Below the pieces are notes generated by a model that was not told where the DNA came from, ran no database searches, and was given only the letters and a program-made list of their open reading frames with translations. A program made the position numbers and the translations under genes. Positions 15,338 through 64,000 of a stretch of 64,000 nucleotides of DNA are shown piece after piece (position 1 is the first letter of the stretch; every line of letters begins with the position of its first letter). The stretch lies in the IMG/VR virus record IMGVR_UViG_3300042562_001598, positions 218,193 through 282,192 of that record. One strand, written 5' to 3'.

Positions 15338-15368
15338 AAAGGGACAAGAAATTGTCCCTTTTTTTTTT
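15338..15368. terminator. Terminator between convergent MCP and endonuclease genes
   Basis: AAAGGGACAA-gaaa-TTGTCCCTTT plus long T-run. Confidence 0.85.
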
Positions 15369-16986
15369 ATAATAAAATTTCATATTTTAAATTACCGGTA
15401 TCCCATATTTTATCGTAACCTAATTCAGACATTATTTGAGATTCTGTTTTATTTTTATCATAACCTAACTTAACTAATCTATCTTTTCTATAGTTAAACC
15501 TATGTTCTCTAACATCATATTTTTTAGTATAACTATAATTAGGTTTTGTTTCCCCAATATAATTAAACCCTGTTTTAGAATAAAAACAAAATTCATCTGA
15601 AGGTGACCAATTTCTGTTAGAATATGTTATAATTTTTTTAGGTGAATATTCCTTTATAAAATGTTTTAATAATTTTGTAAATCCACCAACTACATTTACG
15701 GAACAATAACGATATAATTCATATTCATCTATAGTTTTATTTTTATTACCTAAAATTTTTCTTAATGAACCAAATGACATAACGGCAACAATAATATCAT
15801 TATGTTTTAGACCAAAGTATATTGTTGATTTATCATTACCTTGTAAATGGTTAGTCTTAAGAAAATTACTTTTTTCATCACTACTTATAGTTGTTATTTC
15901 ACAATTTCTCGCATAAATTTTAGTATTATTTTTCTTCAATAAATTAGTAATTCTATTTTTTACTATATTTTTCTTTGTTAACCATTCGTCAGAAAAAATA
16001 TGAATTAATTGAATGTTTTTTTCAAGACATTTTAATGTTTTATCTATATGATAATTTTTATGTTTCCCCCTATTTTCTGAGTGCCAATATAATCCATTAT
16101 ATTCTATAGCTATATTATAATCAGGAAAATACAAATCTAATTCAACACCATTTAATTGTTTCTTATCACAAACTTTAACATCAACACCTAATGATTTAAC
16201 ATATTCCTCAATTTCTTTTTCAGATTTACTTCTGTAGTAAAAATTAGTTTCACATTTTAATAAATTAGATACAAATGTGTCTTTTGTTTTTTTAGAAATT
16301 AAAGAGTTTTCGCCAAATTTATTTTTATATTCCTCGGTTGTTATATTATGTGATGACAAATGAGTGTTAGATAACATTTTAAATTGTTCGTCACATAATT
16401 CACAAGTGACATAATTATCTGTTTCATTAAATAACACATCTCTGTCAATAGAATTTGATAACGTTGTGAATAGTTTAAGTTCTGAAGGGAATTTTAACAC
16501 ATAATCACTAATTGAGTTGTGTGCGTTTTCAATATGTTTAGATAACGCCCCGGATTTATTAACAATATCTTTGGTGACCCATCCACATTCTAAACATTTT
16601 ATTGTTGTTGATTCCGGTTTAGTGATTAAATTAAAGTAAGTAAAATGCCAATAATTCCCAGTATCCGTTAAATACATTCTTCTTTTGAATGAAGATGGGA
16701 TAACTTCATTAGGGTAACATTTTTTAATATGATTAGTTACTCCACCACTTTTATTTTCAATGTCATCATATTCTTTACCACAACACTTACAAGATAGTAT
16801 AATATTTTTATTATCTAACTCAATCTTTTTGACCTGTTTATGTTTGATTTGACCACCTTTAGTTTTTAATGGTATGTTATTACTTAATAAAATTTTTTTA
16901 ATTTTAAGTTTACCAACCTTAAATTCTTTAGCCAAGGTCTCAATAGAGACATTATCTTTATACTTTTCAATTATTATATCTTCCAT
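15367..16986 (-). mobile_element. Free-standing Hef-like homing endonuclease with C2H2-type zinc fingers
   Basis: Three CxxC...H fingers; S..EKE, ELDLY, AIEYNGLYWHS, HIFSDEW, KIYAR.C, NHLQG, KIWDTG motifs; oriented opposite to flanking genes. Confidence 0.85.
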
Positions 16987-43639: not shown

Positions 43640-43725
43640 TAACCTACCCCTGAGCGGTCAGACGCGAGTACTAAAACTCTTATCTTTTCACGACCATTCA
43701 GGGGCTGAATTGTTGTTTGTTGCAT
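43639..43725 (-). CDS. 28-aa N-terminal segment of the same glycosyltransferase, in a different frame
   Basis: MQQTTIQPLNGREKIRVLVLASDRSGVG* reads as the first beta-strand and Gly loop of a GT-B fold; removing one TAGGT copy yields ...SDRSGVGKFRSIDPH... Confidence 0.75.
   Translation of the reverse strand: MQQTTIQPLNGREKIRVLVLASDRSGVG
43647..43704 (-). other. GC-rich RNA stem-loop abutting the frame break
   Basis: mRNA arms CCCCUGAAUGGUC (43704-43692) and GACCGCUCAGGGG (43659-43647) pair 12/13 including one GU. Confidence 0.7.
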
Positions 43726-44611
43726 ACTTGTTTATTATTAGTATTAGTTTATCATTATTAGACTTGAGTTCATTCTCCCAAATCACTTCTAAATTATAAC
43801 CATAACTTTTGACTAAATCAAGTTTTTTTTTATCATAGTCCCACAACTCCCAAGCATATTTATTTTTTTTAGCATTAAAATAATCTTTTGAATATTTGAT
43901 TGGATTACAATGCCAATAATCTCCAAAGTATTCAATTATCAAATTGAGTGAAGGTATATAGATATCACATATTTTACTATCAACTCTATAGGATTGTATT
44001 GCCTCTACCCCCATTTCAGTTAGTAATTCTATTATTTCTTTTTCTTTTTTTGAGGTTATACCCGAATTTAATTTTCCTTTTCTTTGATTTTGTTTCATAA
44101 GTTCAGACATTGTATCTCTATCCCAGATATTATTATCCCAATTAGACCTAGCAATACCCCTACTCATTTGTCGGTATTTTTCTTGTTTCATGTGATTATC
44201 GTAACCAGTGTATTTATTAGTTCTACTCTCCGATATTTGTTTAATAGTACTTTCTTTATGTTTTTTACCGTAAAATGGGTTGTTCTCACCTAAATTACAT
44301 TTACCCATACACTTTTTACAATTACTATTGTCTCGTAATTTATTAAAGTGATTTCTACACGCAATAGTACTTTGTTTAGAATAAGTCTTAATTTCTTCCT
44401 TACACATTGGACATAATCTTGCAACATAAAAATTTTCCCCCTCTTTTACAATATCTAAAGATTTACATCTATCTCGTTGTCTCACTAAATTGTGTTTATG
44501 CAAAATAGCTAAAATAGTATGTTTTGGGACACCCGTCATTTTAGATATTATAATACTTCCATTTCCCTTTTTATATTCAGATATGATTTTTTCTTCAATT
44601 TCTATATTCAT
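43688..44611 (-). mobile_element. Free-standing homing endonuclease (NUMOD3 plus Vsr/DUF559-like nuclease)
   Basis: GENNPFYGKKH (NUMOD3), CxxC pairs, S..EKE, CDIYIP..NLIIEYFGDYWHCNP, IWE. Confidence 0.85.
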
Positions 44612-50233: not shown

Positions 50234-52126
50234 ATGAGTAATTTATTAAACAAAATACCGGTTTCACCATTAACGGTTTTAGGTAATCCGTCAGTTCCAA
50301 ATAACGCAATTTTTGGGACTAATTTTAGTGTATTATCTACCGGTGGTTATATGGAGGTCTATAGTATTAACGATTTAGACTTTATAATCCCTTCAGGTTC
50401 AACAGGTTTAATTGAATATTCCGCAAATACAATTCCAATTCAGTTTAATAAGGGGACGGGGTCACCGTTTTCATATGATGTTATAACACTAAATTCTGAT
50501 AATATTTCTTCAGGTAGAAGAAAGATTGGGATGTTGGTTTATGTTATTGAAGAAAAACAAGTTTATCAATATAGAATTGATAATTATGATACTCTATGGA
50601 ACGCAGCAACAGGTGCTACAGGACCTGGAGGTCCAACAGTTGTTGTATCAAACTTTGGAACAACCATTAAAAATAATACAACTGCTGGTCAGAATTTTAT
50701 TGATGCTTGGTTGAATTCAGGTGTTGACGGGATTGATATTAATCCTAGATGGATTAAGTATTACGGGACAAATTTAGCGGTTACAGGTGGAACTTATAAC
50801 CCAAGTATTAATACTTTAACATTAACTAACATAACCGGAGGAACTATTCCAATCACAGGTTTTAGTGATGCAACAATTTCAGCTTTTACATATAACAATA
50901 ATAATACCTTAACAATAACCGATACATCAGGAGGAACATTTAATGCGACAATTGATGTTATGAGTGGTTTAACCGTTAATGGTATAATATCGGCAACTAC
51001 AATAAATGGAACTAATTTATATGTTACTGGTGGAACTCAATCTTTATTTTCAGGAAATAGTTCATCTGAATTAGTTAAAATCATTCAAGCTGGTTCAGGT
51101 GACGCTTTTGTTGTTCAAGACCAAGCTAATGGTGACGCTTCACATTTTGTTATTAATGCAAGTGGTAATACAGCAATAGGTTTAACACAACCATTGGGTA
51201 ATGATAAATTAACTGTATCTGGTAATACTAGTATTTATGGTACTTTATATGCAACAACATATCAAAATTTACCAGTATCGGTTGTTAATACGAGTTCATT
51301 ATTTTCAACAGGATTAAGTAATACAGGTCTTAATGCCTCAGGTGTTACTTATAGTATATTTTTGGGTGTGAATGCTGGTAATGGTGCAACAAATGCTTAT
51401 AATTCAACTTTTTTAAATGAAAATGCTGGTAGAAGTGCAACAAACGCTTATCATTCTAATTTTATTGGTCAACAAGCTGGTTATCAAGCAACAAATGCTA
51501 ATTTATCAAACTTTTTAGGTTTAAATGCTGGTCAAGGTGCTACTAACGCTCAATTATCTAATTTTTTAGGTAATGAAGCTGGTTATAACGCTACAAGTGC
51601 GTCATTTTCTAATTTATTTGGTTATCAAGTTGGTAAATCTTTTTTAGGTAATAATATTGGGACTAATAATATTATTATTGGTAAAAACATATCATTACCT
51701 AATGCGACAACTAACGCAATTAATATTGGCGGTGTATTATTCGGAATTAACACTTATTCTAATTCATCAGGTAATCCATTCACTGGAGCATCATCAACGG
51801 GTAGAATAGGTATTAATGTTGTTACACCAACTGAAACGTTACATGTATCAGGTAATACATTGATAAATGGTCAATTAACCGCTAATACTGTAAATGCGAC
51901 AACTTCAATATTACCGACACAAGATATTACTGTTAATATTGGAACTCCAACAAATAGATTTAGAGAAGTTAATACATATAGTGGAACTACAACAATTTGG
52001 AGTGCAACAACAATAATTTATTCACCTACTTTAGATTTAGGTTTAGATAGTTTAGGAAATAGTAGAATACTAACAGCAAATTCATCAATATTAAATAATG
52101 ATGTATTATTAGGAGGAAGTTATTAA
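50234..52126 (+). CDS. Tail fibre/adhesin-like protein
   Basis: Thr/Gly/Asn-rich; ~6 SNFxG..AG 17-aa repeats; IGI..P...LHVSG motif; ends LLGGSY. Confidence 0.7.
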   Translation: MSNLLNKIPVSPLTVLGNPSVPNNAIFGTNFSVLSTGGYMEVYSINDLDFIIPSGSTGLIEYSANTIPIQFNKGTGSPFSYDVITLNSDNISSGRRKIGMLVYVIEEKQVYQYRIDNYDTLWNAATGATGPGGPTVVVSNFGTTIKNNTTAGQNFIDAWLNSGVDGIDINPRWIKYYGTNLAVTGGTYNPSINTLTLTNITGGTIPITGFSDATISAFTYNNNNTLTITDTSGGTFNATIDVMSGLTVNGIISATTINGTNLYVTGGTQSLFSGNSSSELVKIIQAGSGDAFVVQDQANGDASHFVINASGNTAIGLTQPLGNDKLTVSGNTSIYGTLYATTYQNLPVSVVNTSSLFSTGLSNTGLNASGVTYSIFLGVNAGNGATNAYNSTFLNENAGRSATNAYHSNFIGQQAGYQATNANLSNFLGLNAGQGATNAQLSNFLGNEAGYNATSASFSNLFGYQVGKSFLGNNIGTNNIIIGKNISLPNATTNAINIGGVLFGINTYSNSSGNPFTGASSTGRIGINVVTPTETLHVSGNTLINGQLTANTVNATTSILPTQDITVNIGTPTNRFREVNTYSGTTTIWSATTIIYSPTLDLGLDSLGNSRILTANSSILNNDVLLGGSY

Positions 52127-52167
52127 TAAAAATTAATATAAAAAAAGAAATTAAATAATATATTAAT

Positions 52168-52307
52168 TATTATTAGTTATATATAATATATAGGAATTTA
52201 TAAAATAAAAGTAAATAATAAAATGCAAATTTAATATTAATATAATAATATATATTATTAGTTATATATAATATATAGAAATTTATAAAAAAAAGTAAAT
52301 AGTAAAA
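52168..52307. repeat. Two ~55-bp direct repeats in an extremely AT-rich intergenic region
   Basis: TATTATTAGTTATATATAATATATAG identical at 52168-52193 and 52253-52278, each continuing RAATTTATAAAA..AAAGTAAATA.TAAAA. Confidence 0.9.
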
Positions 52308-52336
52308 AATAAAAATATATTAAATAAATAAAAATT

Positions 52337-53932
52337 ATGGCGATTAGAAATACTCAATTGGTAATTAAAAATAGTAATGTACCAAGTAAACCTTTTAGTG
52401 GTAGTACATTTCTTCAAGGTGAGGCATTTGTTAATACCGCGGATGGTATTTTAATGTTCTCCGGTAATACTCAATCAACAAGTGAATGGACTCCTGCTGG
52501 AACTGGTGGTAATGGTAATTTCTTTGAAGTAGGTTCTAATCTTTATGATTTAAGACTTAGAAATAGATTAACAAAATATGAAGGTATTTCAGGTTCAGGA
52601 TTAATAGGTAAATTTTTATCAGGAACAACAAATGGTTTTGTTTTAGCGGATATTTCAAATATTATTGGTGTTGATACCTATGTGACCGGATTTACATATC
52701 AAGATAATGTTTTTACAATCAAACAAAATGTAGGTCAACCAAATTTAACAGCAACTATAAATTCTGTAACTGGTTTAACAGTTAATGGGACTTTATCTGC
52801 AACAACTGCAAATTTAGGAACTATTAATGTTAATAATTTAACAATTACAGGAACTGCAACTTATAACAAAACTGCAACAGGTTCAACTGAATTAGTTAAT
52901 TACGGAACATTAACAGCATTTACTCAAACAAATGATGTATATGTAACAGGTAATACATTAACTGCCGCTAATAATGATACTAACACACAATCAGCAGTAT
53001 TAGATTACCATGGCACTCCGATAGGTGGTCCTTATGCTATTACAACTCAAAATACTTTTACAACAGGTGGAACATATTCTAATTCAACTAAATTAGTTAC
53101 ATTTAAACGAAATGATGGTTTAACAGGATATACAGTTGATTTAAGTAATCTTGACACTAATGATACTTATGTAACTGGTGGTACTATAACTACAGCTCCT
53201 TCTAACACTAATATTAGTGGTGTTACAACTCTTTCTTATAGTGATAATTCTTTTCCTAACACATACACTTTACCTTTTACAGATGTATTCACAACCGGAT
53301 TTACTTATAATTCAACAAACAATACATTCACTCTTAAAGATAATAGTGGAAATACATTTAACCAAGCGATTAATACTGTTTCAGGTTTAACATTCTCTAA
53401 CTTAACAGCCGGTAGAGTTGTTTATGTTGGTTCAGGTGGTTTATTAACTGATGAAGCTGGATTTACATATGATGCCGGAACAAATACATTTTCAGTTCCT
53501 TCTGATGGAACGGTTAATGTTGGAACAGGTGGATTAAATGTTGGTGGTGATGCGGTTATCCAAGGTTCTTTAACTGTTTTCGGACCTTCAGTTTCAGCAT
53601 TTACTTCTAACTTATATGTTGAAGACCCTAATATCACATTAAACTACAACCCAACAGGTAACACTACTGTAACTTCAGTAGGTGCTGGATGGACAATTCA
53701 AGATGGTTCAGGTATTGCTAACACGGCAACAACATTAAACATTGGGGTTTCTTACCTAAACGCTAACTTATCTCCAAATACTGAATATACTGCAGCAACA
53801 GGTAATCTAAATAGAAATTTCTATTCTCCAATTGGTGATATTATCATCAGAAATACGAATGGTGATTCAAGTGCACCGAATGGTGTGAGGGTATTGGCTT
53901 CTGGGGATATTTTGAACGGAGGTTCTTATTAG
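52337..53932 (+). CDS. Tail fibre-like protein
   Basis: N-terminal IKNS.VP.KP...GE..VNTADG; repeated D.YVTG(F/G/N)T units; ends LNGGSY. Confidence 0.7.
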   Translation: MAIRNTQLVIKNSNVPSKPFSGSTFLQGEAFVNTADGILMFSGNTQSTSEWTPAGTGGNGNFFEVGSNLYDLRLRNRLTKYEGISGSGLIGKFLSGTTNGFVLADISNIIGVDTYVTGFTYQDNVFTIKQNVGQPNLTATINSVTGLTVNGTLSATTANLGTINVNNLTITGTATYNKTATGSTELVNYGTLTAFTQTNDVYVTGNTLTAANNDTNTQSAVLDYHGTPIGGPYAITTQNTFTTGGTYSNSTKLVTFKRNDGLTGYTVDLSNLDTNDTYVTGGTITTAPSNTNISGVTTLSYSDNSFPNTYTLPFTDVFTTGFTYNSTNNTFTLKDNSGNTFNQAINTVSGLTFSNLTAGRVVYVGSGGLLTDEAGFTYDAGTNTFSVPSDGTVNVGTGGLNVGGDAVIQGSLTVFGPSVSAFTSNLYVEDPNITLNYNPTGNTTVTSVGAGWTIQDGSGIANTATTLNIGVSYLNANLSPNTEYTAATGNLNRNFYSPIGDIIIRNTNGDSSAPNGVRVLASGDILNGGSY

Positions 53933-53956
53933 CGTAATTTTAACAATTAACATTAT

Positions 53957-53989
53957 AAATGGAGTGGTTTTACTACTCCATTTTTTTTT
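53957..53989 (+). terminator. Rho-independent terminator
   Basis: AAATGGAGTGG-tttta-CTACTCCATTT plus T-run. Confidence 0.8.
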
Positions 53990-54072
53990 ATATAAAAAAT
54001 AACATTAATAAAATAACCTATATTTATAATTAAGGGTTTTATAATCCACATAAAAAAACATAAGTCATAAAT

Positions 54073-56973
54073 ATGGCAAATAGAGACACTAGATTTTTAA
54101 TAAAAAGGTCTAATGTTCCTGGTAAAATACCAACAAATGGTGATTTGTTGTTAGGTGAACTCGGTCTAAACACCGCAGACGCAATTTTATATACTTCAGG
54201 AACGACCGCAAATACAATACTACCTATTGGGTGGGATAGAGTAGCACGAACAGGTGATACAATGACAGGTGGTTTATTCACACCATTTCTATCCGCAACT
54301 ACAGTATCCGCAACAACTTATTATAACTTACCAGCAACACCTTTTACGGGAGGAACGGTAAGTGGAGCAACCAATTTTACAAATGGTTTAACTGCGAATA
54401 CTTTTAGTGCGACAAGTATAAATAAAGTTGATTATATTGTATTCAACACTGGAACTACAAGTGCTTCCACAGTAGCTGGTACTGTTTATTTTGACAATAC
54501 TGAACATGCTTTATCATATAATACTTCAATAAATCAAGGTGTTACCGTTAATTTAGGTCAACAAAATTATTTAAGAGTATTCAATAATACGGGTATTGAT
54601 ATTCCTAGAGGTAAAGCATTAGAAAACTTAACAGCTTATAGTGGGGTACCATCTGTAACTTTAGCAGTTAATAACCATACAGGTTTTAATATTATTGGGG
54701 TTTCAGCTGAAATTATACCTAATAATTCTGAAGGTATTGCTATCACAAATGGTATTTTAAGTAATATAGAATTAACTGGTATGACAATTGGGTCATTAGT
54801 TTACGCTTCTGATACTGTACCAGGTAATTTAGATAGTTTAAGTAAATATTTAAACTTTCCACTTACCGCTAGAACAAATACTATTGGTTATGTTATTCAA
54901 ACAGGAGTTACAACAGGTAAATTATATGTTAATATTCAGAATGAAAATTCTGCTTTATCTTTAACTGATTTAGAACGAAATGTATTGGAAGGAAATACAA
55001 TTTCAACGGGGACTTTTGAATATACTGGAATGACAACGGCATCAACAACAACTTTTAATGTTGCACCATTACAAGGTTGGATAGTTAAAAATACATACAC
55101 ATATGCTTTAAGTCCAGATGTTCTAGGTATTAATTATACTGGTGGTACAAACATTTCAGTTACTAATATTGCTTCAGCGGATTCAACATATATTTTAATC
55201 ACTAGTGCTTTAACAGTTACACAACAAGTAACATTTCCAACGCCACAAGAAAGAAGAGAAAATATATTTTTGGGTAAAGTTAATCACCCAAATAGAACGA
55301 GTATATTAAACATAAATAATACAGTTGATTACGATGTATCACCAATGTCATCTTTGCGTGATTTATGGTCACCTATAAGATTGATAAATCAAGGTATTAT
55401 ACCTTCACCAAATGGTGCTAATTTAAGTTTTAATACTTCAGCTGGTATTCTTTGGGGTAATGGTATTAATTGGCATAATAACCAATTAAGTCCTAATAAT
55501 GTTAATATTGCTGCAAAAGTACCAGCGTCATTTTTTTATAGAACTCAAACTGGTGGTACTAGTGGTTCGGTTACAGTTATTGACCCTAGAAAATATGATA
55601 TTGGTGGTGTAATAACTACTATTACACCAGCTGGTAGTAATGATGCGACTAATCAAAGAATTTATATGTACCCTACTGGGGTTATTAATGTTTTGTATGG
55701 TCAAACTAGGTATGCCACATTAGCTGAAGCTATCGCTAATATACAATCTGAAACATTTATACCTTACCCTAACGTAGAGTCTACTGGTATACTTATTGGT
55801 GTTCTTTCTGTTAGAAATGATATTGTTGCTGATGGTGAACCTTTAACCAACACTGATTATGCTAAATTTACACTAGTTTCTAAATTTGGTGAAAGTTTTG
55901 GTGGAACTGGTGGTTTATCAACAACAACACTTCAACAAGCGTATGATAACTCAACAAACCCAGAAATTGTTATAAACTCTACATTGGGTGCATTATCTGT
56001 TAAGAATGGTACAGGAAATGCTGATAATGTTACAAGTTTATTTGAGGGTCAAACCGCAACAAATGGTATTACTTCTATTATAAGAGCTGACGGTTATATT
56101 TCAGGAACTACTTTACATACTAGTGGATTTACGGCTAATTCAACAGGGATATCGGCAAGTACAGCATCTGCAACAACAATATTTACAAGTGGTTTTACAG
56201 CCAATACTACAGGTTTATCTGCAACAACAGTATCCGCTACAACATATTATAATTTACCTTTAGATATTCGTGTAACAGGTGGAACATATAGTAGTGGGAT
56301 AGCAACATTTACGAACAATACCGGTGGGACATTCACAGTAACGGGGTTCACTACTACTGGATTAACTACTACTGGTGTAAATGTTGGTGGTGGTGTTGGT
56401 ATTTATTCTGGTTTTTCAGGAACAAGTTTGGTTTTTAAAACTTTGACATCTACAGCAACAACTATTAATATTATTAATAATAGTGATAGTGTTAACTTAG
56501 AAACTAATGCTGGTGTTGCAGTTGTACCAATCGCAACTTCTAATGTTTCAATTGGAACTGGGTCTAATGATTATTATTTAAATTTTAAAGTTCCATATAA
56601 TTTAATAGTTAAAAGTGTTACGTTTAGTGTATCCATTGCTGGTTCTGATAATGTTAGATTTGGTATTTATAGAGGTCAAGATTTAACTGCTATTTTGGTT
56701 GGTCAAAGTGCCGCAAGTGGTGTTTCAACAATCAATACTTTTAATATAACGGCTGAATCTGGACAAAATTTAAGTTTTAATGCTGGTGAATGGATGGTTA
56801 TTGGTGTGGCAGTTGCCGGGACAACAACTAACTTATATGGTTCCGATTGTCCTGCTAATAACGCTATAGCTTGGACAAATACAACTGATAGTGGTGGTGG
56901 ATTCCCTGTTAATCCTAGAAGTAAAGCTGGTACTAGAACTAGTTTTCCATCTGTTGAAATAAACGTTGTTTAA
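54073..56973 (+). CDS. Tail fibre-like protein
   Basis: N-terminal IKRS.VPGK.P...L.LGEL.LNTAD; GDTMTG; twice LSATTVSATTYYNLP; Thr/Gly-rich. Confidence 0.75.
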   Translation: MANRDTRFLIKRSNVPGKIPTNGDLLLGELGLNTADAILYTSGTTANTILPIGWDRVARTGDTMTGGLFTPFLSATTVSATTYYNLPATPFTGGTVSGATNFTNGLTANTFSATSINKVDYIVFNTGTTSASTVAGTVYFDNTEHALSYNTSINQGVTVNLGQQNYLRVFNNTGIDIPRGKALENLTAYSGVPSVTLAVNNHTGFNIIGVSAEIIPNNSEGIAITNGILSNIELTGMTIGSLVYASDTVPGNLDSLSKYLNFPLTARTNTIGYVIQTGVTTGKLYVNIQNENSALSLTDLERNVLEGNTISTGTFEYTGMTTASTTTFNVAPLQGWIVKNTYTYALSPDVLGINYTGGTNISVTNIASADSTYILITSALTVTQQVTFPTPQERRENIFLGKVNHPNRTSILNINNTVDYDVSPMSSLRDLWSPIRLINQGIIPSPNGANLSFNTSAGILWGNGINWHNNQLSPNNVNIAAKVPASFFYRTQTGGTSGSVTVIDPRKYDIGGVITTITPAGSNDATNQRIYMYPTGVINVLYGQTRYATLAEAIANIQSETFIPYPNVESTGILIGVLSVRNDIVADGEPLTNTDYAKFTLVSKFGESFGGTGGLSTTTLQQAYDNSTNPEIVINSTLGALSVKNGTGNADNVTSLFEGQTATNGITSIIRADGYISGTTLHTSGFTANSTGISASTASATTIFTSGFTANTTGLSATTVSATTYYNLPLDIRVTGGTYSSGIATFTNNTGGTFTVTGFTTTGLTTTGVNVGGGVGIYSGFSGTSLVFKTLTSTATTINIINNSDSVNLETNAGVAVVPIATSNVSIGTGSNDYYLNFKVPYNLIVKSVTFSVSIAGSDNVRFGIYRGQDLTAILVGQSAASGVSTINTFNITAESGQNLSFNAGEWMVIGVAVAGTTTNLYGSDCPANNAIAWTNTTDSGGGFPVNPRSKAGTRTSFPSVEINVV

Positions 56974-56984
56974 TAAAAATTAAA

Positions 56985-57533
56985 ATGGATAATATAAAAA
57001 TAGAATTTATTGGTAGTGGTTTAAAAACAACTATTGGTGAACTGACTGAAATTAATAAAAATTATATTTTATCACATCAATTAGAATGTAACAGAACTAT
57101 ACCTATAATTAATATTAATTCTCAATTGTCTTATACAGATTGGAAAGATTTTAATACAATTGGTGATTATTATGGTTTTGTTTATGGTGGTAATAATTTA
57201 ATTAATATTAGTATAAATAATCAATTAGTAGAAAATAATATTATTGAAATAAGGGAATATCCTATTTTCAATAATAATAAAAATTATTTGATGAGTATTG
57301 AACATCTACATGGGGATATATTTTCAACCTATGAATTTAGTATTGATGGTTTTGACATCAATAAATTAAAAATAAAATTAATGGACTTAAACTGTTTATT
57401 ATGGGGTGAATTAATAATAGGTGTAGAATATGATGGTAATAATATAAACTTAAATAAAGGTATAACAAATGTTTATGCTTTTGAACATTTAGTTTTTGAT
57501 AATGATATGATAGTACCTATATTCAAATATTAA
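56985..57533 (+). CDS. Hypothetical protein, very AT-rich
   Basis: 182-aa ORF directly after the fibre gene. Confidence 0.55.
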   Translation: MDNIKIEFIGSGLKTTIGELTEINKNYILSHQLECNRTIPIININSQLSYTDWKDFNTIGDYYGFVYGGNNLINISINNQLVENNIIEIREYPIFNNNKNYLMSIEHLHGDIFSTYEFSIDGFDINKLKIKLMDLNCLLWGELIIGVEYDGNNINLNKGITNVYAFEHLVFDNDMIVPIFKY

Positions 57534-57590: not shown

Positions 57591-60500
57591 ATGAGATTAA
57601 CGGATAGAGTATTAGCAACGGGAATTACGTCAACAGATTTATTACATATAGTCATTACTGGTGACACAACACAAAGCCCGGAAGGGTCTTCATATAAGGC
57701 GTCCATAGGTCAAATACAAACGTTTTTTGGTCAACAACTAATTATAACCGGAACGGGGATTACATCTTCTATAAGACGAGATTCAGGTAACTCCGCTTCC
57801 GGCAATTTTTCTTCCTCAATTCCTGGGTCAGGAAATACATCTTCAGGTCATTTATCTTATTCTGAAGGTGAAAATACATTATCAAGTGGTAGAACCTCAC
57901 ATTCCGAAGGTGGAAATACTATTGCCGGTGGTGATTATTCACATGTTGAAGGTTTTAATAGTGAAGCTTATGGTAATTATGCTCACGCTGAAGGATTTAA
58001 TACTTTAGCTAGTGGTTTTGGTTCTCATGCCGAAGGTGGTGACACAATAGCTTCAGGTAATGGTTCTCACGCTGAAGGTAAAAACACTCAAGCAATTGGT
58101 ACTTATTCACATGTTGAAGGTTCTTACAATATTGCTAGTGGTATATCGTCACACTCCGAAGGGTATTATACCCAATCCAATGGAGAAAATTCACATTCGG
58201 AAGGTACTTTTTCAATTGCTACAGGTGATAATTCTCACGCGGAAGGTAATCTAACTAATTCTGTTGGTGAAAACTCACATGCTGAGGGTAGTGAAACAAT
58301 AGCTAGTGGTATATCATCACATGCCGAAGGATATTTAACTCAAGCTATTGGTGATTATTCTCATTCGGGTGGTCATAATACAATCGCTTCAGGAGAAACT
58401 TCATTTATTCATTCTAAAGATTCCACAGTTTATAGTGATTACTCAAGTATTTTGGGTGGTTCAGGTAATACAATTACTGGTTTAACTGTTTCTAGTGGGT
58501 CAAGTAATAACACTGCGATTATTGGTGGTAATAACAACTTAATTAGTAATCAGACGATTGATTTAGGGTATGCTAATGGTATTGGTGACTCTGTAAATAG
58601 TACAATAATTGGTGGTCAATATAATAGTATATATGGTCATAAAAACTCATCAATCATTGGGGGTTCTGGTAATACAATTCACTTTGATTTCCCTATAGTT
58701 TATAATGATTCTGAAATAATTGCAGGTTCTATAGATTCGTTAATTACCGCAACCACTATTAGTAGTATTATATCATCTTCAGGTTCAACATTATTTGCAA
58801 CTAATCAAACATCAATATTAGGGGGTAAGAACAATTTTGCGGTATTTTACGATAATAGTTTAATACTTGGTGGTGAAGACAATACTATTGGTGTATTAGG
58901 TAACCCTACAGGTCCTGGATTAAACACCGTTATTGTTGGTGGTAAAAATCATAAAACTACAGTTGGATTAGTTCAATCAGTTATATTAGGTGGTGAAAAC
59001 ATAACGGCAACAACAGACAATACTGTATATACACCATATCTAAATATTCAATCAGCAACAACAGATAATAATGTTACTAATGTTCTTGTTAGAGATACTG
59101 ATGGTTCTGTTAAACTAAAAACAGTAAGTTCTTTTAGTGGAACATCATTATATTGGTATGCTGAAAATTCTACACCACCAACAACAGCACCTTTGGCTAG
59201 TGGTACTGGTTCTATTGCTTTGGGTAATGGAGCTGAAGCTTTGGGTGGTGATATGTTTGTTTATGGAACTAATGCTGGCAGTGGAACGACTGGTGCTGAT
59301 TTTTCTAATTTTATTGGTGCTCAAGCAGGTATTGCTGCAACAAATAGTACAGGTTCAAATTTTATAGGTCCTGGTGCTGGTCAAAGTGCTACAAACTCAA
59401 ATGATTCTAACTTTATAGGTAATGGTGCTGGTTTAAATGCTACAGACGCCAGTCTTTCAAATTTTATCGGAGGTAACGCTGGTTCCAGTACGGTATATTC
59501 ATATTATTCAAACTTTATTGGGTTTAACGCTGGCCAAGCAGCAATAAATAGTAATAATTCTAACTTTATTGGTGAAAACGCTGGTAATAACGCAATAAAT
59601 GCTAATGACGCAACTTTTATTGGTAGTCGTGCTGGTGAAAATACAACTAATGTTTCTAATTCAACCCTTATTGGTGAATACGCTGGTTCTGGGGCAACAG
59701 GTGTAACTGATTCAAATTTCATAGGTAATGGAGCTGGTCAGGGTGCGAAAAATCTTATTTATTCTAATTTTGAGGGTTATCAATCAGGTTTTGAGGCTAG
59801 TGGGTCTAGTTACTCTAATTTTTCAGGATTTTATGCGGGGTATAAATCAAACACTTCAACATATTCAAATTTAATTGGGCATAGACCTGGTTATGAATCT
59901 GTTGGTATTATTAATTCTAATTTAATAGGTGTTGATGCTGGTTATCAATCAACGGGTCTTGTAAATGTTAATTTAATTGGTAGATATGCGGGTAGACAAG
60001 CGTCAACAATAAGTTTATCTAATTTTATAGGATATTTTGCGGGATATTTATCTTCAGGTAATACTGTTGCAAACTTTATAGGTCAAAACGCGGGTTATTT
60101 GTCAAGTAGTTCTTCTTATACTAATATTTTTGGTTACGAGGCTGGTAGTACATCTACAGGTAATACATACTCTAATTTTATAGGTAGAGGTGCTGGTATG
60201 AGTGCAACAACATCTTATAATAGTAACTTTATTGGTTTATACGCTGGTAGAAGTGCAAATAGTTCTTATTATTCTAATTTTATTGGAAATAATGCGGGTT
60301 ATGAATCAATTAATAATACTTATGGTAACTTTATCGGATTAAGTGCTGGTTATCAATCAACTGGTAATACTTATGGTAATTTTATTGGAAATCAAGCTGG
60401 TTATCAGTCAACAGGTAATACTTATGGTAATTTTATTGGTACAAACGCTGGTAGAGGTGCTAGTAATTCATTAAATTCAAACTTTATTGGTAGCTCCGCT

Positions 60501-63500
60501 GGATTAGAGACCATTAGTAATTATTCTAACTTTATTGGTGCTGAAGCTGGTTATCAATCAATAACAACAGGTAATGCGTATATTAACTTTATTGGTACTC
60601 GTACTGGTTATCAATCAACTGGTAGTACTGTATCAAATTTTATAGGTTATCAAGCAGGTTATCAAAGTAGTGATAGTATACATTCTAATTATTTAGGTTC
60701 TAATGCTGGTTATCAAAGTAGTGGTAATACATATGTTAATAGTATAGGGATTAATGCTGGTTATCTATCTTCAGGAACAACTAGTTCAAATTTTATGGGT
60801 ACTAGTGCTGGTAGAGAGTCTAGTTCTGATTACTCTAACTTTTTAGGTTATCAAACAGGTTATGGTACAATAGGTTCTAATTATTCTAATTTTATCGGAT
60901 ATAATGCGGGGAATAGTGCGTCTACTTCCACCAATTCAAATTTTATTGGTTATTCTGCGGGTTATTCATCTACAGGAACAACAACTAGTAATTTTATTGG
61001 TTATAATGCGGGTAAAAGTTCAGATAGTGTAATTGCTTCTAATTTTATTGGTCTTAATGCGGGTAATCTATCAACAGGAACAACAAATACTATTTTTATT
61101 GGAACTAATGCCGGACTTCAGTCAAATAATAATTCGTCAGCTAATTTTATCGGTAACTCAGCGGGTTGGTTAAGTAATGATAACTTAAATGGAACTTTTA
61201 TTGGTACAAGTGCGGGTAGAAATGGTAGTGGTAACACATATAGTAATTTTATTGGTTATCAAGCGGGATATTTATCTTCAGGTAATACTGTTGCAAACTT
61301 TATAGGTCAAAACGCGGGTTATTTGTCAAGTAACTCTTCTTATTCTAATTTATTTGGTTTTGAAGCTGGTAGTACATCTACAGGTAATACATACTCTAAT
61401 TTTATAGGTAGAGGTGCTGGTATTACAACAACTAATGCGAATAATAGTAATTTTATAGGGTTATATGCTGGTAGAGGTGCGAATAGTTCATCTTATTCTA
61501 ATTTTATTGGTAATAACGCAGGATACGAAGCTAATGGTTCTGGTGATTCTAATTTCATTGGTAAAAGTGCTGGTTACCAAGCTACCGGTTCAACTAGTTC
61601 TAACTTTATAGGTGTTAGTTCCGGTTATTTAGCGAAAGGGTCTTACGACGCTAATTTTATTGGTAGAGAAAGTGGTTATCAAGCTACCGGAGCTTATGGT
61701 TCTAATTTTATAGGTAAAGGTGTTGGTCAATCAGCAACAAACGCATTTTATTCTACTTTTATAGGTGTTCAAACTGGTTATCAGGCGATTGAATCTACTA
61801 ATTCAAACTTTATAGGTTATAACACAGGTTATTCTGCGAGTGGAGCGACAGGTTCAAATTTTATGGGACAATACGCTGGTTATGGGGCGACAGATGCTGC
61901 GGCTTCTAACTTCATAGGTAGTTTTGCCGGTAGTGGTGCGTCAGGTTCTTACTATTCTAATTTTATGGGTCAAAATGCCGGTAAAAGTGCGTCAAACTCA
62001 GTCCTTTCTAATTTTATTGGTTATTCGGCTGGTAGTGGAGCGACCAATGTTAATACTTCAAACTTTTTAGGTCAAAATGCGGGTAGTGGTGCGACTAATG
62101 TTGTTAGTTCTAATTTTATTGGTTCAAACGCTGGTAATAGTGCTAAAAGTTCTAATTATTCTAATTTTATAGGTAATAATGCTGGGTACGAAACAACAGG
62201 GTCTAGTTATTCAACTTTAATTGGTTATGCTGTTGGTAGAACATTTACTAATAACAATATTGGTTCAAATAATATTATTATCGGAACAAATGTTACATTA
62301 CCAAATGGTACTACAAATAGTATTAACATCGGAGGTGTTTTATTTGGTTCTAACACTTATTCAACAATAACAGGAAATCCAATTACAGGTGCAACCTCAA
62401 CAGGTAAAATAGGTATTAATGTTGTTACACCAACTGAAGCATTACATGTATCGGGTAATACTCTTATTGATGGAAGTTTAACTGCGACTACCTTAAACAT
62501 ACGAACTTTAGGTGGTGGAACATCAGTAACTAATTTAGGTGTTGATTCGTTAGGTAATGTTGTTACTGGAACTACAGGTGGTAATACATCCCCAATTTCA
62601 GTTATTAGTGGAAGTTCATTATTCTCAACAGGGTTAAGTAATACAGGTCTTAATGCTTCTGGTGTTACTAATAGTATATTTTTTGGTGTTAGTGCTGGTC
62701 ATACTGCGACAGGTGCTACTAACTCAAACTTTTTAGGTTTAGACGCGGGTAATGGAGCGACAAATGCCGCTCAATCAAACTTTATTGGTTATCAAGTTGG
62801 TCTTACCGCCACAGGGGCTTCATTTTCAAACTTTATAGGTTGGAATGCTGGTAATGGTGCGAAACTTGGTTATAGTTCAAACTTTATAGGTATAGAAGCT
62901 GGTAGAGATGCGACAAATGCTAATGACTCAAACTTTATGGGTACTTATGCTGGTAAGGCGGCTACAGGAGCTTATCAATCAAATTTCTTTGGTATTAGTG
63001 CTGGTTTTCAAGCTACAGGTGCTTATCAATCAAATTTTATGGGTAATCAAGCTGGTTATGGTGCTACAGGTGCTACTAACTCTAATTTCTTTGGTCCGAG
63101 CGCTGGTTTTCAAGCGATAAATGCTAATCAATCAAACTTTCTTGGTATTAGTGCGGGTAATGGTGCGACAAATGCTAATGATTCAAATTTCTTTGGTTTA
63201 CAAGCTGGGTATCTAGCAACAGGTTCTAGTTATTCTACGTTCATAGGTTATTATGCTGGTAGAACTGCGACAAACGCTAGTAACTCAAACTTTATGGGTT
63301 ATCAAGCTGGTGGCGGAGCGACAGGTGCTAGTAACTCAAATTTTATGGGTCAGAATGCGGGTAATAGTGCGACAGGTGCTACTAACTCTAATTTCTTTGG
63401 TGGTCAAGCTGGTTATTTAGCGACAAATGCGAGTTATTCAAATTTTCTTGGTTATTTTGCGGGTTATCAAGCGACAGGTGTTACTCAGTCAAACTTTTTA

Positions 63501-64000
63501 GGATTACAAGCTGGTCAAAATGCTACAAATGCGACCTATTCTAATTTCTTTGGTAGTAACGCTGGTAATGGTGCAACAACCGCTAATAATTCTAACTTCT
63601 TTGGTTCTAATGCTGGTAATGGAGGTAAAAACGCTTATCATTCTAATTTTATCGGTAATAATGCGGGTAATGGTGCGACTGATGCTAATAGGTCTAATTT
63701 TATAGGTGTTAACGCTGGATATCAGGCGACAGGCTCAACTCTTTCAACATTTATTGGTTATCAAGCGGGGTACAACGCAATCGGTAGTACTACACCTGGT
63801 TCTAATAATATTATTATAGGTACAAACATAACATTAAGTGCGGGTACATCAAATAGTATTAATATTGGTGGTGTGTTATTTGGTAGTGGAACTTATTCGT
63901 CAACTGCTGGTAATCCAACTACAGGTGCAACCTCAACAGGTAAAATAGGTATTAATGTTGTTACACCAACTGAAGCATTACATGTATCAGGTAATACACT
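57591..64000 (+). CDS. Giant repeat-rich fibre/adhesin (>2,130 aa, runs off window; absent from ORF track)
   Basis: ATG 57591 after TATTTAT (57562-57568); same frame checked at 58020 (GSHAEG), 60000 (ASTISLSNFIG) and 63960 (VTPTEALHVSG); 14-aa SHAEG and 17-aa SNFIG..AG repeats. Confidence 0.9.
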   Translation, partial: MRLTDRVLATGITSTDLLHIVITGDTTQSPEGSSYKASIGQIQTFFGQQLIITGTGITSSIRRDSGNSASGNFSSSIPGSGNTSSGHLSYSEGENTLSSGRTSHSEGGNTIAGGDYSHVEGFNSEAYGNYAHAEGFNTLASGFGSHAEGGDTIASGNGSHAEGKNTQAIGTYSHVEGSYNIASGISSHSEGYYTQSNGENSHSEGTFSIATGDNSHAEGNLTNSVGENSHAEGSETIASGISSHAEGYLTQAIGDYSHSGGHNTIASGETSFIHSKDSTVYSDYSSILGGSGNTITGLTVSSGSSNNTAIIGGNNNLISNQTIDLGYANGIGDSVNSTIIGGQYNSIYGHKNSSIIGGSGNTIHFDFPIVYNDSEIIAGSIDSLITATTISSIISSSGSTLFATNQTSILGGKNNFAVFYDNSLILGGEDNTIGVLGNPTGPGLNTVIVGGKNHKTTVGLVQSVILGGENITATTDNTVYTPYLNIQSATTDNNVTNVLVRDTDGSVKLKTVSSFSGTSLYWYAENSTPPTTAPLASGTGSIALGNGAEALGGDMFVYGTNAGSGTTGADFSNFIGAQAGIAATNSTGSNFIGPGAGQSATNSNDSNFIGNGAGLNATDASLSNFIGGNAGSSTVYSYYSNFIGFNAGQAAINSNNSNFIGENAGNNAINANDATFIGSRAGENTTNVSNSTLIGEYAGSGATGVTDSNFIGNGAGQGAKNLIYSNFEGYQSGFEASGSSYSNFSGFYAGYKSNTSTYSNLIGHRPGYESVGIINSNLIGVDAGYQSTGLVNVNLIGRYAGRQASTISLSNFIGYFAGYLSSGNTVANFIGQNAGYLSSSSSYTNIFGYEAGSTSTGNTYSNFIGRGAGMSATTSYNSNFIGLYAGRSANSSYYSNFIGNNAGYESINNTYGNFIGLSAGYQSTGNTYGNFIGNQAGYQSTGNTYGNFIGTNAGRGASNSLNSNFIGSSAGLETISNYSNFIGAEAGYQSITTGNAYINFIGTRTGYQSTGSTVSNFIGYQAGYQSSDSIHSNYLGSNAGYQSSGNTYVNSIGINAGYLSSGTTSSNFMGTSAGRESSSDYSNFLGYQTGYGTIGSNYSNFIGYNAGNSASTSTNSNFIGYSAGYSSTGTTTSNFIGYNAGKSSDSVIASNFIGLNAGNLSTGTTNTIFIGTNAGLQSNNNSSANFIGNSAGWLSNDNLNGTFIGTSAGRNGSGNTYSNFIGYQAGYLSSGNTVANFIGQNAGYLSSNSSYSNLFGFEAGSTSTGNTYSNFIGRGAGITTTNANNSNFIGLYAGRGANSSSYSNFIGNNAGYEANGSGDSNFIGKSAGYQATGSTSSNFIGVSSGYLAKGSYDANFIGRESGYQATGAYGSNFIGKGVGQSATNAFYSTFIGVQTGYQAIESTNSNFIGYNTGYSASGATGSNFMGQYAGYGATDAAASNFIGSFAGSGASGSYYSNFMGQNAGKSASNSVLSNFIGYSAGSGATNVNTSNFLGQNAGSGATNVVSSNFIGSNAGNSAKSSNYSNFIGNNAGYETTGSSYSTLIGYAVGRTFTNNNIGSNNIIIGTNVTLPNGTTNSINIGGVLFGSNTYSTITGNPITGATSTGKIGINVVTPTEALHVSGNTLIDGSLTATTLNIRTLGGGTSVTNLGVDSLGNVVTGTTGGNTSPISVISGSSLFSTGLSNTGLNASGVTNSIFFGVSAGHTATGATNSNFLGLDAGNGATNAAQSNFIGYQVGLTATGASFSNFIGWNAGNGAKLGYSSNFIGIEAGRDATNANDSNFMGTYAGKAATGAYQSNFFGISAGFQATGAYQSNFMGNQAGYGATGATNSNFFGPSAGFQAINANQSNFLGISAGNGATNANDSNFFGLQAGYLATGSSYSTFIGYYAGRTATNASNSNFMGYQAGGGATGASNSNFMGQNAGNSATGATNSNFFGGQAGYLATNASYSNFLGYFAGYQATGVTQSNFLGLQAGQNATNATYSNFFGSNAGNGATTANNSNFFGSNAGNGGKNAYHSNFIGNNAGNGATDANRSNFIGVNAGYQATGSTLSTFIGYQAGYNAIGSTTPGSNNIIIGTNITLSAGTSNSINIGGVLFGSGTYSSTAGNPTTGATSTGKIGINVVTPTEALHVSGNT
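60039..61525 (+). repeat. ~260-bp internal duplication in the giant ORF
   Basis: GCGGGATATTTATCTTCAGGTAATACTGTTGCAAAC... at ~60039-60300 and ~61263-61525, near-identical. Confidence 0.85.
62384..63988 (+). repeat. 69-bp exact direct repeat, with a diverged third copy at ~51800-51860
   Basis: TACAGGTGCAACCTCAACAGGTAAAATAGG...CATGTATC at 62384-62452 and 63920-63988. Confidence 0.9.

What the first reader, a model, noticed from the sequence alone, without database searches (positions are those of the whole stretch)
50234..54260. Possible plug-and-socket chaining of consecutive fibre proteins
Seen: ORF 50234 ends NDVLLGGSY* and ORF 52337 ends GDILNGGSY*. The gene following each begins with the same domain: MAIRNT..VIKNSNVPSKP...GE..VNTAD (52337) and MANRDT..LIKRSNVPGKIP...GE..LNTAD (54073). 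Inference: a C-terminal D-x-L-x-GGSY peptide docks into the next protein's N-terminal domain, building a segmented fibre A->B->C in gene order.
Basis: partly seen in the sequence, partly recalled or inferred. Interest (0 to 1): 0.6.

Follow-up and report, generated by a model that had tools for sequence, protein, structure and literature searches.

The report
End-to-end joints between tail-fibre proteins
Three neighbouring tail-fibre genes of a large T4-like phage carry matching end motifs that most likely join the three proteins end to end into one segmented fibre, using the same kind of joint that links gp36 to gp37 in phage T4, here used twice.

Summary
ORF A (50234-52126) and ORF B (52337-53932) are the only two ORFs in the 282-kb genome that end in GGSY. 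The genes after them, B and C (54073-56973), are the only two with the MA.R.T..[KR][NR]S..P..GE..NTAD N-domain.

The pattern is general. In 102 related IMG/VR loci the order is A (a-type end), then B (B-type N-domain plus b-type end), then C (C-type N-domain). It holds although the middle parts vary several-fold in length. An independent scan for D.LDGG.Y-stop again found mostly proteins followed by such an N-domain.

The C-type N-domain is homologous to the N-terminus of T4 gp37 (hhalign E 1.4e-6, shared PHROGs). gp36-like proteins of five T4-like phages end in [ILQ]-D-[FY]-G-x-[YF]-stop, the same end motif. T4 gp36 is known to bind the gp37 N-terminal region.

A complex prediction (3 x A-end + 3 x B-N) passed: ipSAE 0.67, best control 0.00. 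The last 13 residues of A pair with the first 13 of B.

Verdict: the plug-and-socket reading is supported in silico. It is the T4 distal-fibre joint, duplicated and diverged into two types, so a variant of a known kind. No binding has been measured.

The parts
50234..52126 (+). Gene A, first fibre segment (630 aa). Its N-terminus is not a socket. The body shares SNF[IL]G..AG..A repeats with the giant ORF at 57591. It ends in an a-type plug.
   Evidence: No Pfam family at E<=0.1; only a weak PHROG hit (phrog_23630, E 3.9e-4).
51914..52123 (+). Conserved C-terminal domain of A, about 70 aa (P..D..IG.P..RFR..N..SG.T..W...P.LDLG.DS.GN.R.ITA.NS.I..D.L.GG.Y).
   Evidence: Alignment A4 of 46 loci has invariant P26, G35, R40, F41, R42, G49, L67, G68, D70, R76, A80, S83 and D88.
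52085..52123 (+). a-type plug: the last 13 residues of A (SILNNDVLLGGSY).
   Evidence: Residues 83-95 of the A-end construct are all in the predicted interface. D, L, GG and the terminal Y/F are conserved.
52127..52336 (.). A-B spacer, 210 nt and very AT-rich, with an 83-85-nt tandem duplication (52127-52209 and 52212-52294).
   Evidence: Most relatives have spacers of 25-70 nt here.
52337..53932 (+). Gene B, middle fibre segment (531 aa), with a B-type socket at the N-terminus and a b-type plug at the C-terminus.
52337..52696 (+). Conserved N-terminal region of B (120 aa). The socket proper is residues 1-31 or so (52337-52429).
   Evidence: Alignment A5 has 72% mean column identity. The predicted interface is residues 1-13, 18-19, 23, 26 and 31.
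53555..53929 (+). Conserved C-terminal domain of B (125 aa; LYVED.NITLNYNPTG..AGWTIQDG...NGVRVL..D.L.GG.Y). The b-type plug is the last 13 residues or so (53891-53929).
   Evidence: Alignment A6 of 48 loci. Its end aligns with gp36-like ends of five T4-like phages.
53933..54072 (.). B-C spacer, 140 nt, with a hairpin at 53957-53983 followed by a T run (terminator-like).
   Evidence: In about 10 related loci a homing-endonuclease-like gene sits in this spacer.
54073..56973 (+). Gene C, distal fibre segment (966 aa), with a C-type socket at the N-terminus and a variable C-terminus without a plug.
54073..54237 (+). C-type socket, residues 1-55, homologous to the T4 gp37 N-terminus.
   Evidence: hhalign of A7 against T4 gp37 1-120: probability 90%, E 1.4e-6 over 59 columns. 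PHROG hits phrog_17885 (2.5e-8), 20242, 35830, 19966 and 1699 are shared with T4 gp37.
54238..54279 (+). Internal RVARTGDTMTGGLF motif of C (residues 56-69). This is the common fibre motif that the b-type plug resembles.
   Evidence: The same motif occurs in T4 gp36 residues 173-184 and in a gp34-like chain, 9f4a.

Best explanation
The window is the end of a 282-kb, roughly 30% GC genome of a distant T4-like myovirus. Genes A, B and C encode three trimeric fibre segments that assemble non-covalently, head to tail, in gene order.

The last 13 residues or so of the upstream trimer, ending [LI]-x-G-G-x-[YF]-COOH, are backed by a conserved end domain. They interleave as parallel beta-strands with the first 13 residues or so of the downstream trimer (M-A-x-R-x-T...[KR]-[NR]-S). 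The rest of the N-domain (P...GE..NTAD) buttresses the joint.

Two cognate types exist: an a-type plug with a B-type socket, and a b-type plug with a C-type socket. This pairing would fix the order A, B, C. C has a socket but no plug and a hypervariable C-terminus, so it would be the distal, receptor-binding segment. The B-to-C joint is the homologue of the T4 gp36-to-gp37 joint. The A-to-B joint is a diverged duplicate of it.

Shown: the motifs, their conservation, the gene order, the homology to gp37 and the gp36-like ends, and a passing in-silico complex. Inferred: actual binding, 3:3 stoichiometry, type specificity, and that A is the virion-proximal segment.
For: T4-like terminase, portal and gp23 genes lie in the window.

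The genome has two plugs and two sockets, and they are adjacent.

The a / B..b / C architecture is seen complete in 65 of 102 loci. Most other loci are cut by contig ends or interrupted by inserted genes; the other departures are listed under evidence against. It holds although A spans 123-707 aa, B 331-1179 aa and C 180 to more than 1735 aa. The ends are therefore conserved independently of the shafts.

a-type ends are always followed by B-type sockets and b-type ends by C-type sockets. The one departure is the extra stand-alone b-type protein of L012/L014.

Natural fusions join A and B in one polypeptide: L020 (plug lost) and L067 (plug and socket both excised).

Complex prediction: median ipSAE 0.67 (0.50-0.79), best of 3 controls 0.00. 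Runs agree in at least 82% of contacts and the partner pLDDT is at least 68. The tool's calibration says 58 of 80 solved complexes and 2 of 110 mismatched pairs reach the mark. Invariant D88 of A touches invariant R4 of B.

The C socket is homologous to the T4 gp37 N-terminus.

gp36-like proteins of T4, RB49, Kimel, JIPh_Kp122 and RCIP0020 end in [ILQ]-D-[FY]-G-x-[YF]* directly before gp37.

T4 gp36 trimer binds the N-terminal region of gp37 (PMC3004832).

The plug-only scan recovers socket genes downstream.
Against: No experiment was done, and the complex score is the model's own confidence. The controls were unrelated proteins, not other fibre ends, so a generic end-to-end stacking of two beta-rich trimers is not excluded.

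Covariation between plug and socket columns was inconclusive with 46-48 sequences.

A and B have no Pfam gp36 domain. The B-type socket matches T4 gp37 only weakly (E 0.024).

Some proteins break a strict chain logic. A stand-alone b-type end domain without a socket occurs in L012/L014. The L020 fusion keeps the socket without a plug. Cyanophages P-SSM2 and S-CAM7 have sockets with no adjacent plug gene.
Confidence: 0.7

Rival explanations
1. The C-terminal motif is a self-contained folding or trimerisation nucleus of each fibre protein, like the fibritin foldon or other C-terminal registration elements. The N-domain is a general anchor that binds something else, such as the baseplate or neck. 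Their adjacency is only conserved synteny of paralogous fibre genes.
For: Fibre folding is commonly nucleated at the C-terminus (established knowledge, T4 fibritin). The plug occurs on many small proteins whose next gene is not a socket gene, such as the S-CAM7 85-aa protein beside the gp13/gp14 neck genes and the 77-aa protein in L148. Sockets occur without an adjacent plug in cyanophages. All co-occurrence data come from syntenic relatives, so they are not independent events.
Against: C, also a fibre, lacks the motif, and so do the other fibre-like ORFs of the genome. The predicted interface is hetero-oligomeric, with controls at 0.00. The homologous T4 pair gp36/gp37 is known to bind at these ends. 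The L067 fusion removes plug and socket together and joins the shafts, as expected for a joint rather than a folding nucleus.
Confidence: 0.15
2. The conserved ends are mainly recombination boundaries. Conserved coding termini, spacers and homing endonucleases would serve the exchange of fibre shafts between phages, without the two termini needing to touch.
For: The middle parts are hypervariable between conserved ends. Homing-endonuclease-like genes lie exactly in the A-B or B-C spacers in about 10 loci. The GDTMTG-like motif is widespread in fibres.
Against: Conservation is at protein level, not DNA level. The two junctions in the window share no long identical DNA, and the motif persists at 45-60% protein identity across loci. 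Recombination sites would not need an invariant terminal aromatic residue right at the stop codon. This reading is compatible with, and secondary to, a structural joint.
Confidence: 0.1

Closest known systems
Phage T4 long tail fibre, distal half: gp36 trimer joined to the N-terminal region of the gp37 trimer (genes 36 then 37)
   Same: The downstream protein starts with the homologous N-domain..F-K-R-S-K-I-A-G-T-R-P....L-A-E-G-E-L-A-I-N in T4 against ..L-I-K-R-S-N-V-P-G-K-I-P....L-L-G-E-L-G-L-N in C (hhalign E 1.4e-6; shared PHROGs). The upstream protein ends in hydrophobic-D/x-G/F-G-x-aromatic-stop. The plug gene lies directly before the socket gene. The segments are trimeric, beta-rich fibres in gene order.
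   Different: The joint is used twice in series, with two diverged plug and socket types. The upstream proteins A and B are not gp36-family members (no PF03903) and are much larger. No gp35 kneecap or gp34 homologue was recognised next to them. B carries both a socket and a plug. Atomic detail of the T4 joint was not found in the papers searched.
Branched receptor-binding-protein assemblies with N-terminal adaptor domains (G7C gp63.1/gp66, CBA120 TSP1-4, K1-5 adaptor; from general knowledge and the introduction of PMC12143355)
   Same: A conserved N-terminal module of one fibre or spike attaches it to another fibre protein. The distal parts are exchangeable.
   Different: Those adaptors bind side-on to dedicated domains and build branches. 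Here a C-terminal end meets an N-terminal end collinearly. No sequence relation was found.
C-terminal foldon of T4 fibritin and other C-terminal registration elements
   Same: A short conserved C-terminal beta element with aromatic residues at the very end of a trimeric fibre.
   Different: The foldon acts within one protein and has no partner. No Pfam match to it was found. Here the element is predicted to pair with another protein.

Membership tests
T4-type distal fibre joint (gp36 C-end / gp37 N-domain) | The downstream fibre protein begins with the gp37-type N-terminal domain. | tested here: met
   C: hhalign of A7 against T4 gp37 1-120, probability 90%, E 1.4e-6; PHROGs 17885, 20242, 35830, 19966 and 1699 shared with gp37. 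B: related to C (BLASTP E 1e-5) but only weakly to T4 gp37 (E 0.024).
T4-type distal fibre joint (gp36 C-end / gp37 N-domain) | The upstream protein ends in the gp36-type C-terminal motif, [ILQ]-D-[FY]-G-x-[YF]-stop in the five T4-like phages checked. | tested here: met
   B ends ..ILNGGSY and its relatives ..LDGG.[YF] (47 of 48 have D at position -5). T4, RB49, Kimel, JIPh_Kp122 and RCIP0020 end ..QDFGYY..IDFGTF..LDYGSF..IDFGTY and ..IDFGSY. A (..LLGGSY) shares L, G-G and the terminal Y but not the D at -5.
T4-type distal fibre joint (gp36 C-end / gp37 N-domain) | The plug gene lies immediately upstream of the socket gene on the same strand. | tested here: met
   Window. 87 of 100 distinct cases in IMG/VR, with most of the rest interrupted by inserted genes. 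T4-like phages.
T4-type distal fibre joint (gp36 C-end / gp37 N-domain) | The two trimers physically bind end to end. | not testable with these tools
   Only an in-silico proxy is available: ipSAE 0.67 against a best control of 0.00 for A-end x3 with B-N x3.
Pfam PF03903 Phage_T4_gp36 | A match to the gp36 domain model in the upstream protein. | tested here: not met
   T4 gp36 scores 9.6e-53. A and B have no Pfam family at E<=0.1. A and B are therefore not filed as gp36 homologues; only the terminal motif is shared.
Fibritin foldon / Peptidase_S74 intramolecular chaperone (C-terminal folding elements) | A sequence match to the family model at the C-terminus. | tested here: not met
   No Pfam hits. 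There is only an insignificant likeness of the A-end P..D...LG...R...Y..G stretch to T5 pb1, just before its cleavage site (E 0.3-0.5).
Mtd_N-type N-terminal domain (Bordetella phage BPP-1 Mtd) | A Pfam match to the Mtd N-terminal domain. | tested here: not met
   No Pfam family at E<=0.1 for B or C. The likeness recalled from memory stays a lead only. An Mtd_N-like start (..RRGT....F.G..GE..VNT..DT) was read by eye, not scanned, in neighbours of plug proteins in L147.

The most novel reading that the evidence does not exclude
The [LI]-D/x-G-G-x-[YF]-COOH end plus the gp37-type N-domain would be a portable, type-coded connector system used far beyond T4's gp36/gp37. It may chain and perhaps branch fibres of many aquatic T4-like and other phages. 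It would include minimal 'link' proteins of 92-103 aa that consist only of socket plus plug. It would also include small plug-only proteins of 77-136 aa, such as the cyanophage phrog_3384 family beside the neck genes, which could hang socket-bearing giant fibres on the neck or baseplate. The a/B and b/C pairings would be an assembly code that sets segment order.
Probability: 0.45. Interest if true: 0.6.

Novelty: new variant of a known kind. Interest (0 to 1): 0.45.

Why it matters
If the joint works as predicted, it gives a simple sequence rule: a terminal ..L-x-G-G-x-Y next to a gene starting M-A-x-R...K-R/N-S..P..GE..N..D. That rule would identify which unannotated phage ORFs are serial segments of one fibre and in what order. 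Most of these proteins have no Pfam or PHROG name today.

It would also mark natural, exchangeable break-points for studying how fibre shafts and receptor-binding tips are swapped between phages.

Finally, it would add sequence-level detail to the T4 gp36-gp37 junction. That junction has long been known genetically and by low-resolution EM, but it was not described at residue level in the papers I could search.

Tried and rejected
(1) Pfam and PHROG scans of the full-length A, B and C proteins gave essentially nothing. Only the isolated N-domain of C gave PHROG hits.

(2) tblastn of B, and of the C N-domain, against 50,697 phage records found nothing at E<=0.01. Only cyanophage hits appeared, at E about 2.

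(3) Profile searches of the four end alignments against PDB sequences found nothing significant.

(4) AlphaFold2 monomer models of the B N-terminal region (pLDDT 65.5, pTM 0.32) and the B C-terminal domain (pLDDT 52.8) were too poor for a fold search, so none was run.

(5) Mutual-information covariation between plug and socket columns showed no enrichment at the predicted interface.

(6) Circular closure of the contig to finish the giant ORF failed, because the ends do not overlap.

(7) The idea that the two junctions are a recent DNA duplication or gene-conversion tract was rejected.

(8) The idea that the GGSY ends precede read-through or a frameshift into the next gene was rejected. The spacers are 210 and 140 nt, AT-rich, full of stops, and one carries a terminator-like hairpin.

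It was sent again with TAY-TAA fixed, so that scan samples only Y-ended, TAA-stopped plugs with D at position -5.

(10) Rfam and a fold test on the repeat at the contig start gave nothing.


Full report
**Context.** The window is the last 64 kb of a single 282,192-bp contig. It carries a T4-type large terminase (5905), portal (7741) and gp23-type major capsid gene (13471). GC content is about 30%. The nearest capsid relatives are an uncultured 484-kb phage and Flavobacterium phage immuto, at 40-46% identity. The genome is therefore a large, distant T4-like myovirus. The start codons of A, B and C are preceded by A/T-rich sequence without a GGAGG-like box. I take this, as inference only, to fit a Bacteroidota-type host.

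**The observation.**
- ORF A (50234-52126, 630 aa) ends ..NNDVLLGGSY and ORF B (52337-53932, 531 aa) ends ..SGDILNGGSY.
- B and C (54073-56973, 966 aa) begin with the same roughly 48-residue domain: 24/48 identical, E 1e-5.
- In the whole genome these are the only two ORFs with that end and the only two places with that N-domain.
- The two junctions are not recent DNA copies.
- The conserved C-terminal parts are domains, not just peptides: about 70 aa in A and about 110-125 aa in B.

**Generality, searching from the socket.**
- Two IMG/VR scans with the B-type and C-type N-domains returned 102 loci.
- 65 loci show the full order: protein with a-type end (..R.ITA[ND]NS.I..D.L.GG.[YF]), then protein with B-type N-domain and b-type end (..NGVRVL.E.D.LDGG.[YF]), then protein with C-type N-domain and no plug. 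Most of the rest are cut by contig ends or interrupted by inserted genes.
- Of 100 distinct N-domain genes with an upstream neighbour, 87 directly follow a plug-ended gene.
- Nine of the other 13 have a homing-endonuclease-like gene (ending ..GF[IV]W.FK) inserted in the spacer. The rest have another inserted gene, a variant plug (..DAGDY) or a truncated B.
- Across these loci A spans 123-707 aa, B 331-1179 aa and C 180 to more than 1735 aa. The ends stay conserved throughout: D, L, G-G and the terminal aromatic in 45-48 of 46-48 sequences.
- a-type ends precede B-type sockets and b-type ends precede C-type sockets. The one departure is the extra stand-alone b-type protein of L012/L014.

**Generality, searching from the plug.**
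- A collection scan for D.LDGG.Y followed by TAA gave 118 matches. 108 lie at the end of an open frame of at least 60 codons. 79 have an ORF matching an HMM of the N-domain (E<1e-3) starting within 3 kb downstream.
- Of the 30 ORF-end cases without one, at least 14 have the N-domain elsewhere in the locus or inside the same small protein. Others are followed by a divergent socket, such as M-A-S-T-Q-T-I-K-I-K-R-S.. in L111.
- This scan also exposed further plug-bearing families. These include 92-103-aa proteins that are only socket plus plug (L190:866-1144). There are also 136-aa and 77-aa plug proteins, and a 222-aa plug protein 4 kb upstream of a socket-bearing protein of at least 1961 aa (L130).
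- In cyanophage S-CAM7 the only ORF ending in the motif is an 85-aa protein (phrog_3384, function unknown) just upstream of ORFs that I read from their sequences as gp13/gp14 neck proteins. It lies 94 kb from the socket-bearing giant fibre gene.
- Its 21 distinct IMG/VR relatives all end T-[DN]-T-[IL]-D-[GAC]-G-x-F.
- P-SSM2 has a socket protein but no match to the strict plug pattern.

**Relation to T4.**
- T4 gp37 begins M-A-T-L-K-Q-I-Q-F-K-R-S-K-I-A-G-T-R-P...L-A-E-G-E-L-A-I-N.
- The profile of C-type N-domains aligns to it with probability 90% and E 1.4e-6 over 59 columns.
- The first 110 residues of C hit the same PHROGs as the gp37 N-terminus, annotated 'long tail fiber protein distal subunit'.
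- T4 gp36, encoded directly upstream, ends ..D-S-V-Q-D-F-G-Y-Y. The gp36-like proteins of RB49, Kimel, JIPh_Kp122 and RCIP0020 end ..I-D-F-G-T-F..L-D-Y-G-S-F..I-D-F-G-T-Y and ..I-D-F-G-S-Y.
- Counted from the stop codon, this is the b-type plug with F/Y in place of the first G.
- T4 assembly studies state that trimeric gp36 binds the N-terminal region of gp37 and that gp36 is the proximal part of the distal half-fibre (PMC3004832; PMC3157838).
- B-to-C is therefore the homologue of a known joint. A and B themselves are not gp36-family proteins: PF03903 is absent.
- The b-type end also resembles the common internal fibre motif R-V-L-x-S-G-D-T-M-T-G. That motif is seen in gp36 173-184, in C 56-69 and in a gp34-like PDB chain. 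The plug may thus be that motif placed at a chain end.

**Predicted complex.** Three copies of the last 95 residues of A were folded with three copies of the first 120 residues of B, using my alignments A4 and A5.
- ipSAE was 0.67, 0.79 and 0.50 in three runs (median 0.67). Three controls with unrelated proteins gave 0.00.
- The runs agree in at least 82% of contacts and the partner's pLDDT is at least 68.
- In the tool's calibration 58 of 80 solved complexes and 2 of 110 mismatched pairs reach this mark. The tool warns that these counts hold only roughly for this kind of job.
- The interface is A-end residues 70, 72, 74, 76 and 83-95, against B residues 1-13, 18-19, 23, 26 and 31.
- The closest pairs run in parallel register (A 86-93 with B 5-11). 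Each B strand also touches a second A chain (A 88-91 with B 3-6). This reads as interleaved strands of the two trimers.
- Invariant D88 of A, the D of D.L.GG.Y, touches invariant R4 of B.
- This supports binding but does not show it. The controls were not fibre ends.

**Natural fusions.**
- In L020, L021, L038 and L039, A residues 1-123 are fused to B from about residue 6. The plug is lost.
- In L067 a 490-aa protein matches the A-end model only up to column 68 of 95 and then the B N-terminal model from column 77. Plug and socket are excised together and the shafts joined.
- Both fusions put A and B on one polypeptide in the order A then B, as a collinear joint predicts.

**Rivals.** A purely intramolecular folding element, or mere recombination boundaries, cannot be excluded without experiments. 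Neither explains well the absence of the plug from C, the hetero-oligomeric prediction, the T4 precedent or the L067 excision. I give them 0.15 and 0.10 against 0.70 for the joint.

**What failed.** Monomer AF2 models were too poor for fold searches. Covariation analysis was inconclusive. PDB sequence searches found nothing significant.

**Verdict.** The feature is not a new principle. It is the T4 gp36/gp37-type fibre joint, here duplicated into two diverged, apparently type-specific joints that string three proteins together. The sequence signature turns out to be widespread and largely unannotated in aquatic phages.

Noticed in passing
window 52127-52294: An 83-85-nt tandem duplication (78% identical) makes up most of the 210-nt A-B spacer. 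Most related loci have only 25-70 nt there.
   Followed up: partly
L024, L025, L036, L067, L083, L098, L102 (B-C spacer); L063, L082 (A-B spacer): Homing-endonuclease-like genes of about 255-333 aa, ending ..GF[IV]W.FK, are inserted exactly between plug gene and socket gene in about 10 related loci. P-SSM2 and S-CAM7 have an annotated HNH endonuclease directly upstream of their socket gene.
   Followed up: partly
window 57591-63998: A giant ORF (more than 2136 aa) is cut by the contig end. It is built of roughly 15-residue SNF[IL]G..AG..A repeats and repeated ..NNIIIG..INIGGVLFG..GINVVTPTE.LHVSGNT modules. Gene A contains one such block and looks like a single unit of it capped by a plug.
   Followed up: partly
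L067:2504-3976; L020:5611-6966: Natural A-B fusion proteins. L067 lacks both plug and socket. L020 lacks the plug but keeps the socket internally.
   Followed up: yes
L014:1546-1932 (also L012): An extra 128-aa protein between A and B is a stand-alone copy of the b-type end domain without a socket. Its role in a strict chain model is unexplained.
   Followed up: partly
L190:866-1144 and about 10 similar loci: Proteins of 92-103 aa consist only of a gp37-type N-domain and a ..D.LDGG.Y end. They are possible minimal link or adaptor units.
   Followed up: partly
L106:1270-1527 (Synechococcus phage S-CAM7) and L228-L253: A conserved 85-aa cyanophage protein family (phrog_3384, function unknown) ends T-[DN]-T-[IL]-D-[GAC]-G-x-F. 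It sits just before ORFs that I read from their sequences as the gp13/gp14 neck proteins.
   Followed up: partly
window 13471-15315: The major capsid gene encodes 614 aa, but the best Pfam Gp23 stretch covers only residues 348-599. This suggests a long N-terminal extension or an inserted domain.
   Followed up: no
window 15367-16986 (-) and 43688-44611 (-): A 538-aa ORF (PHROG homing / HNH endonuclease, E 2.7e-101) lies next to the capsid gene. A 307-aa ORF with a ..GENNPFYGKKH.. box (my reading from its sequence, not scanned) suggests a second mobile endonuclease gene in the structural region.
   Followed up: no
G000:C1:1-400 (L227; outside the window, at the contig start): Two tandem units of about 198 nt, richer in GC than the genome, each end in a GC hairpin plus a T run. 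There is no Rfam match and the fold z-score is only -0.7.
   Followed up: partly
window 56985-57533: A 182-aa ORF directly after C has no family match. Its position recalls tail-fibre assembly or adhesin genes after T4 gene 37, but nothing supports that beyond position.
   Followed up: no
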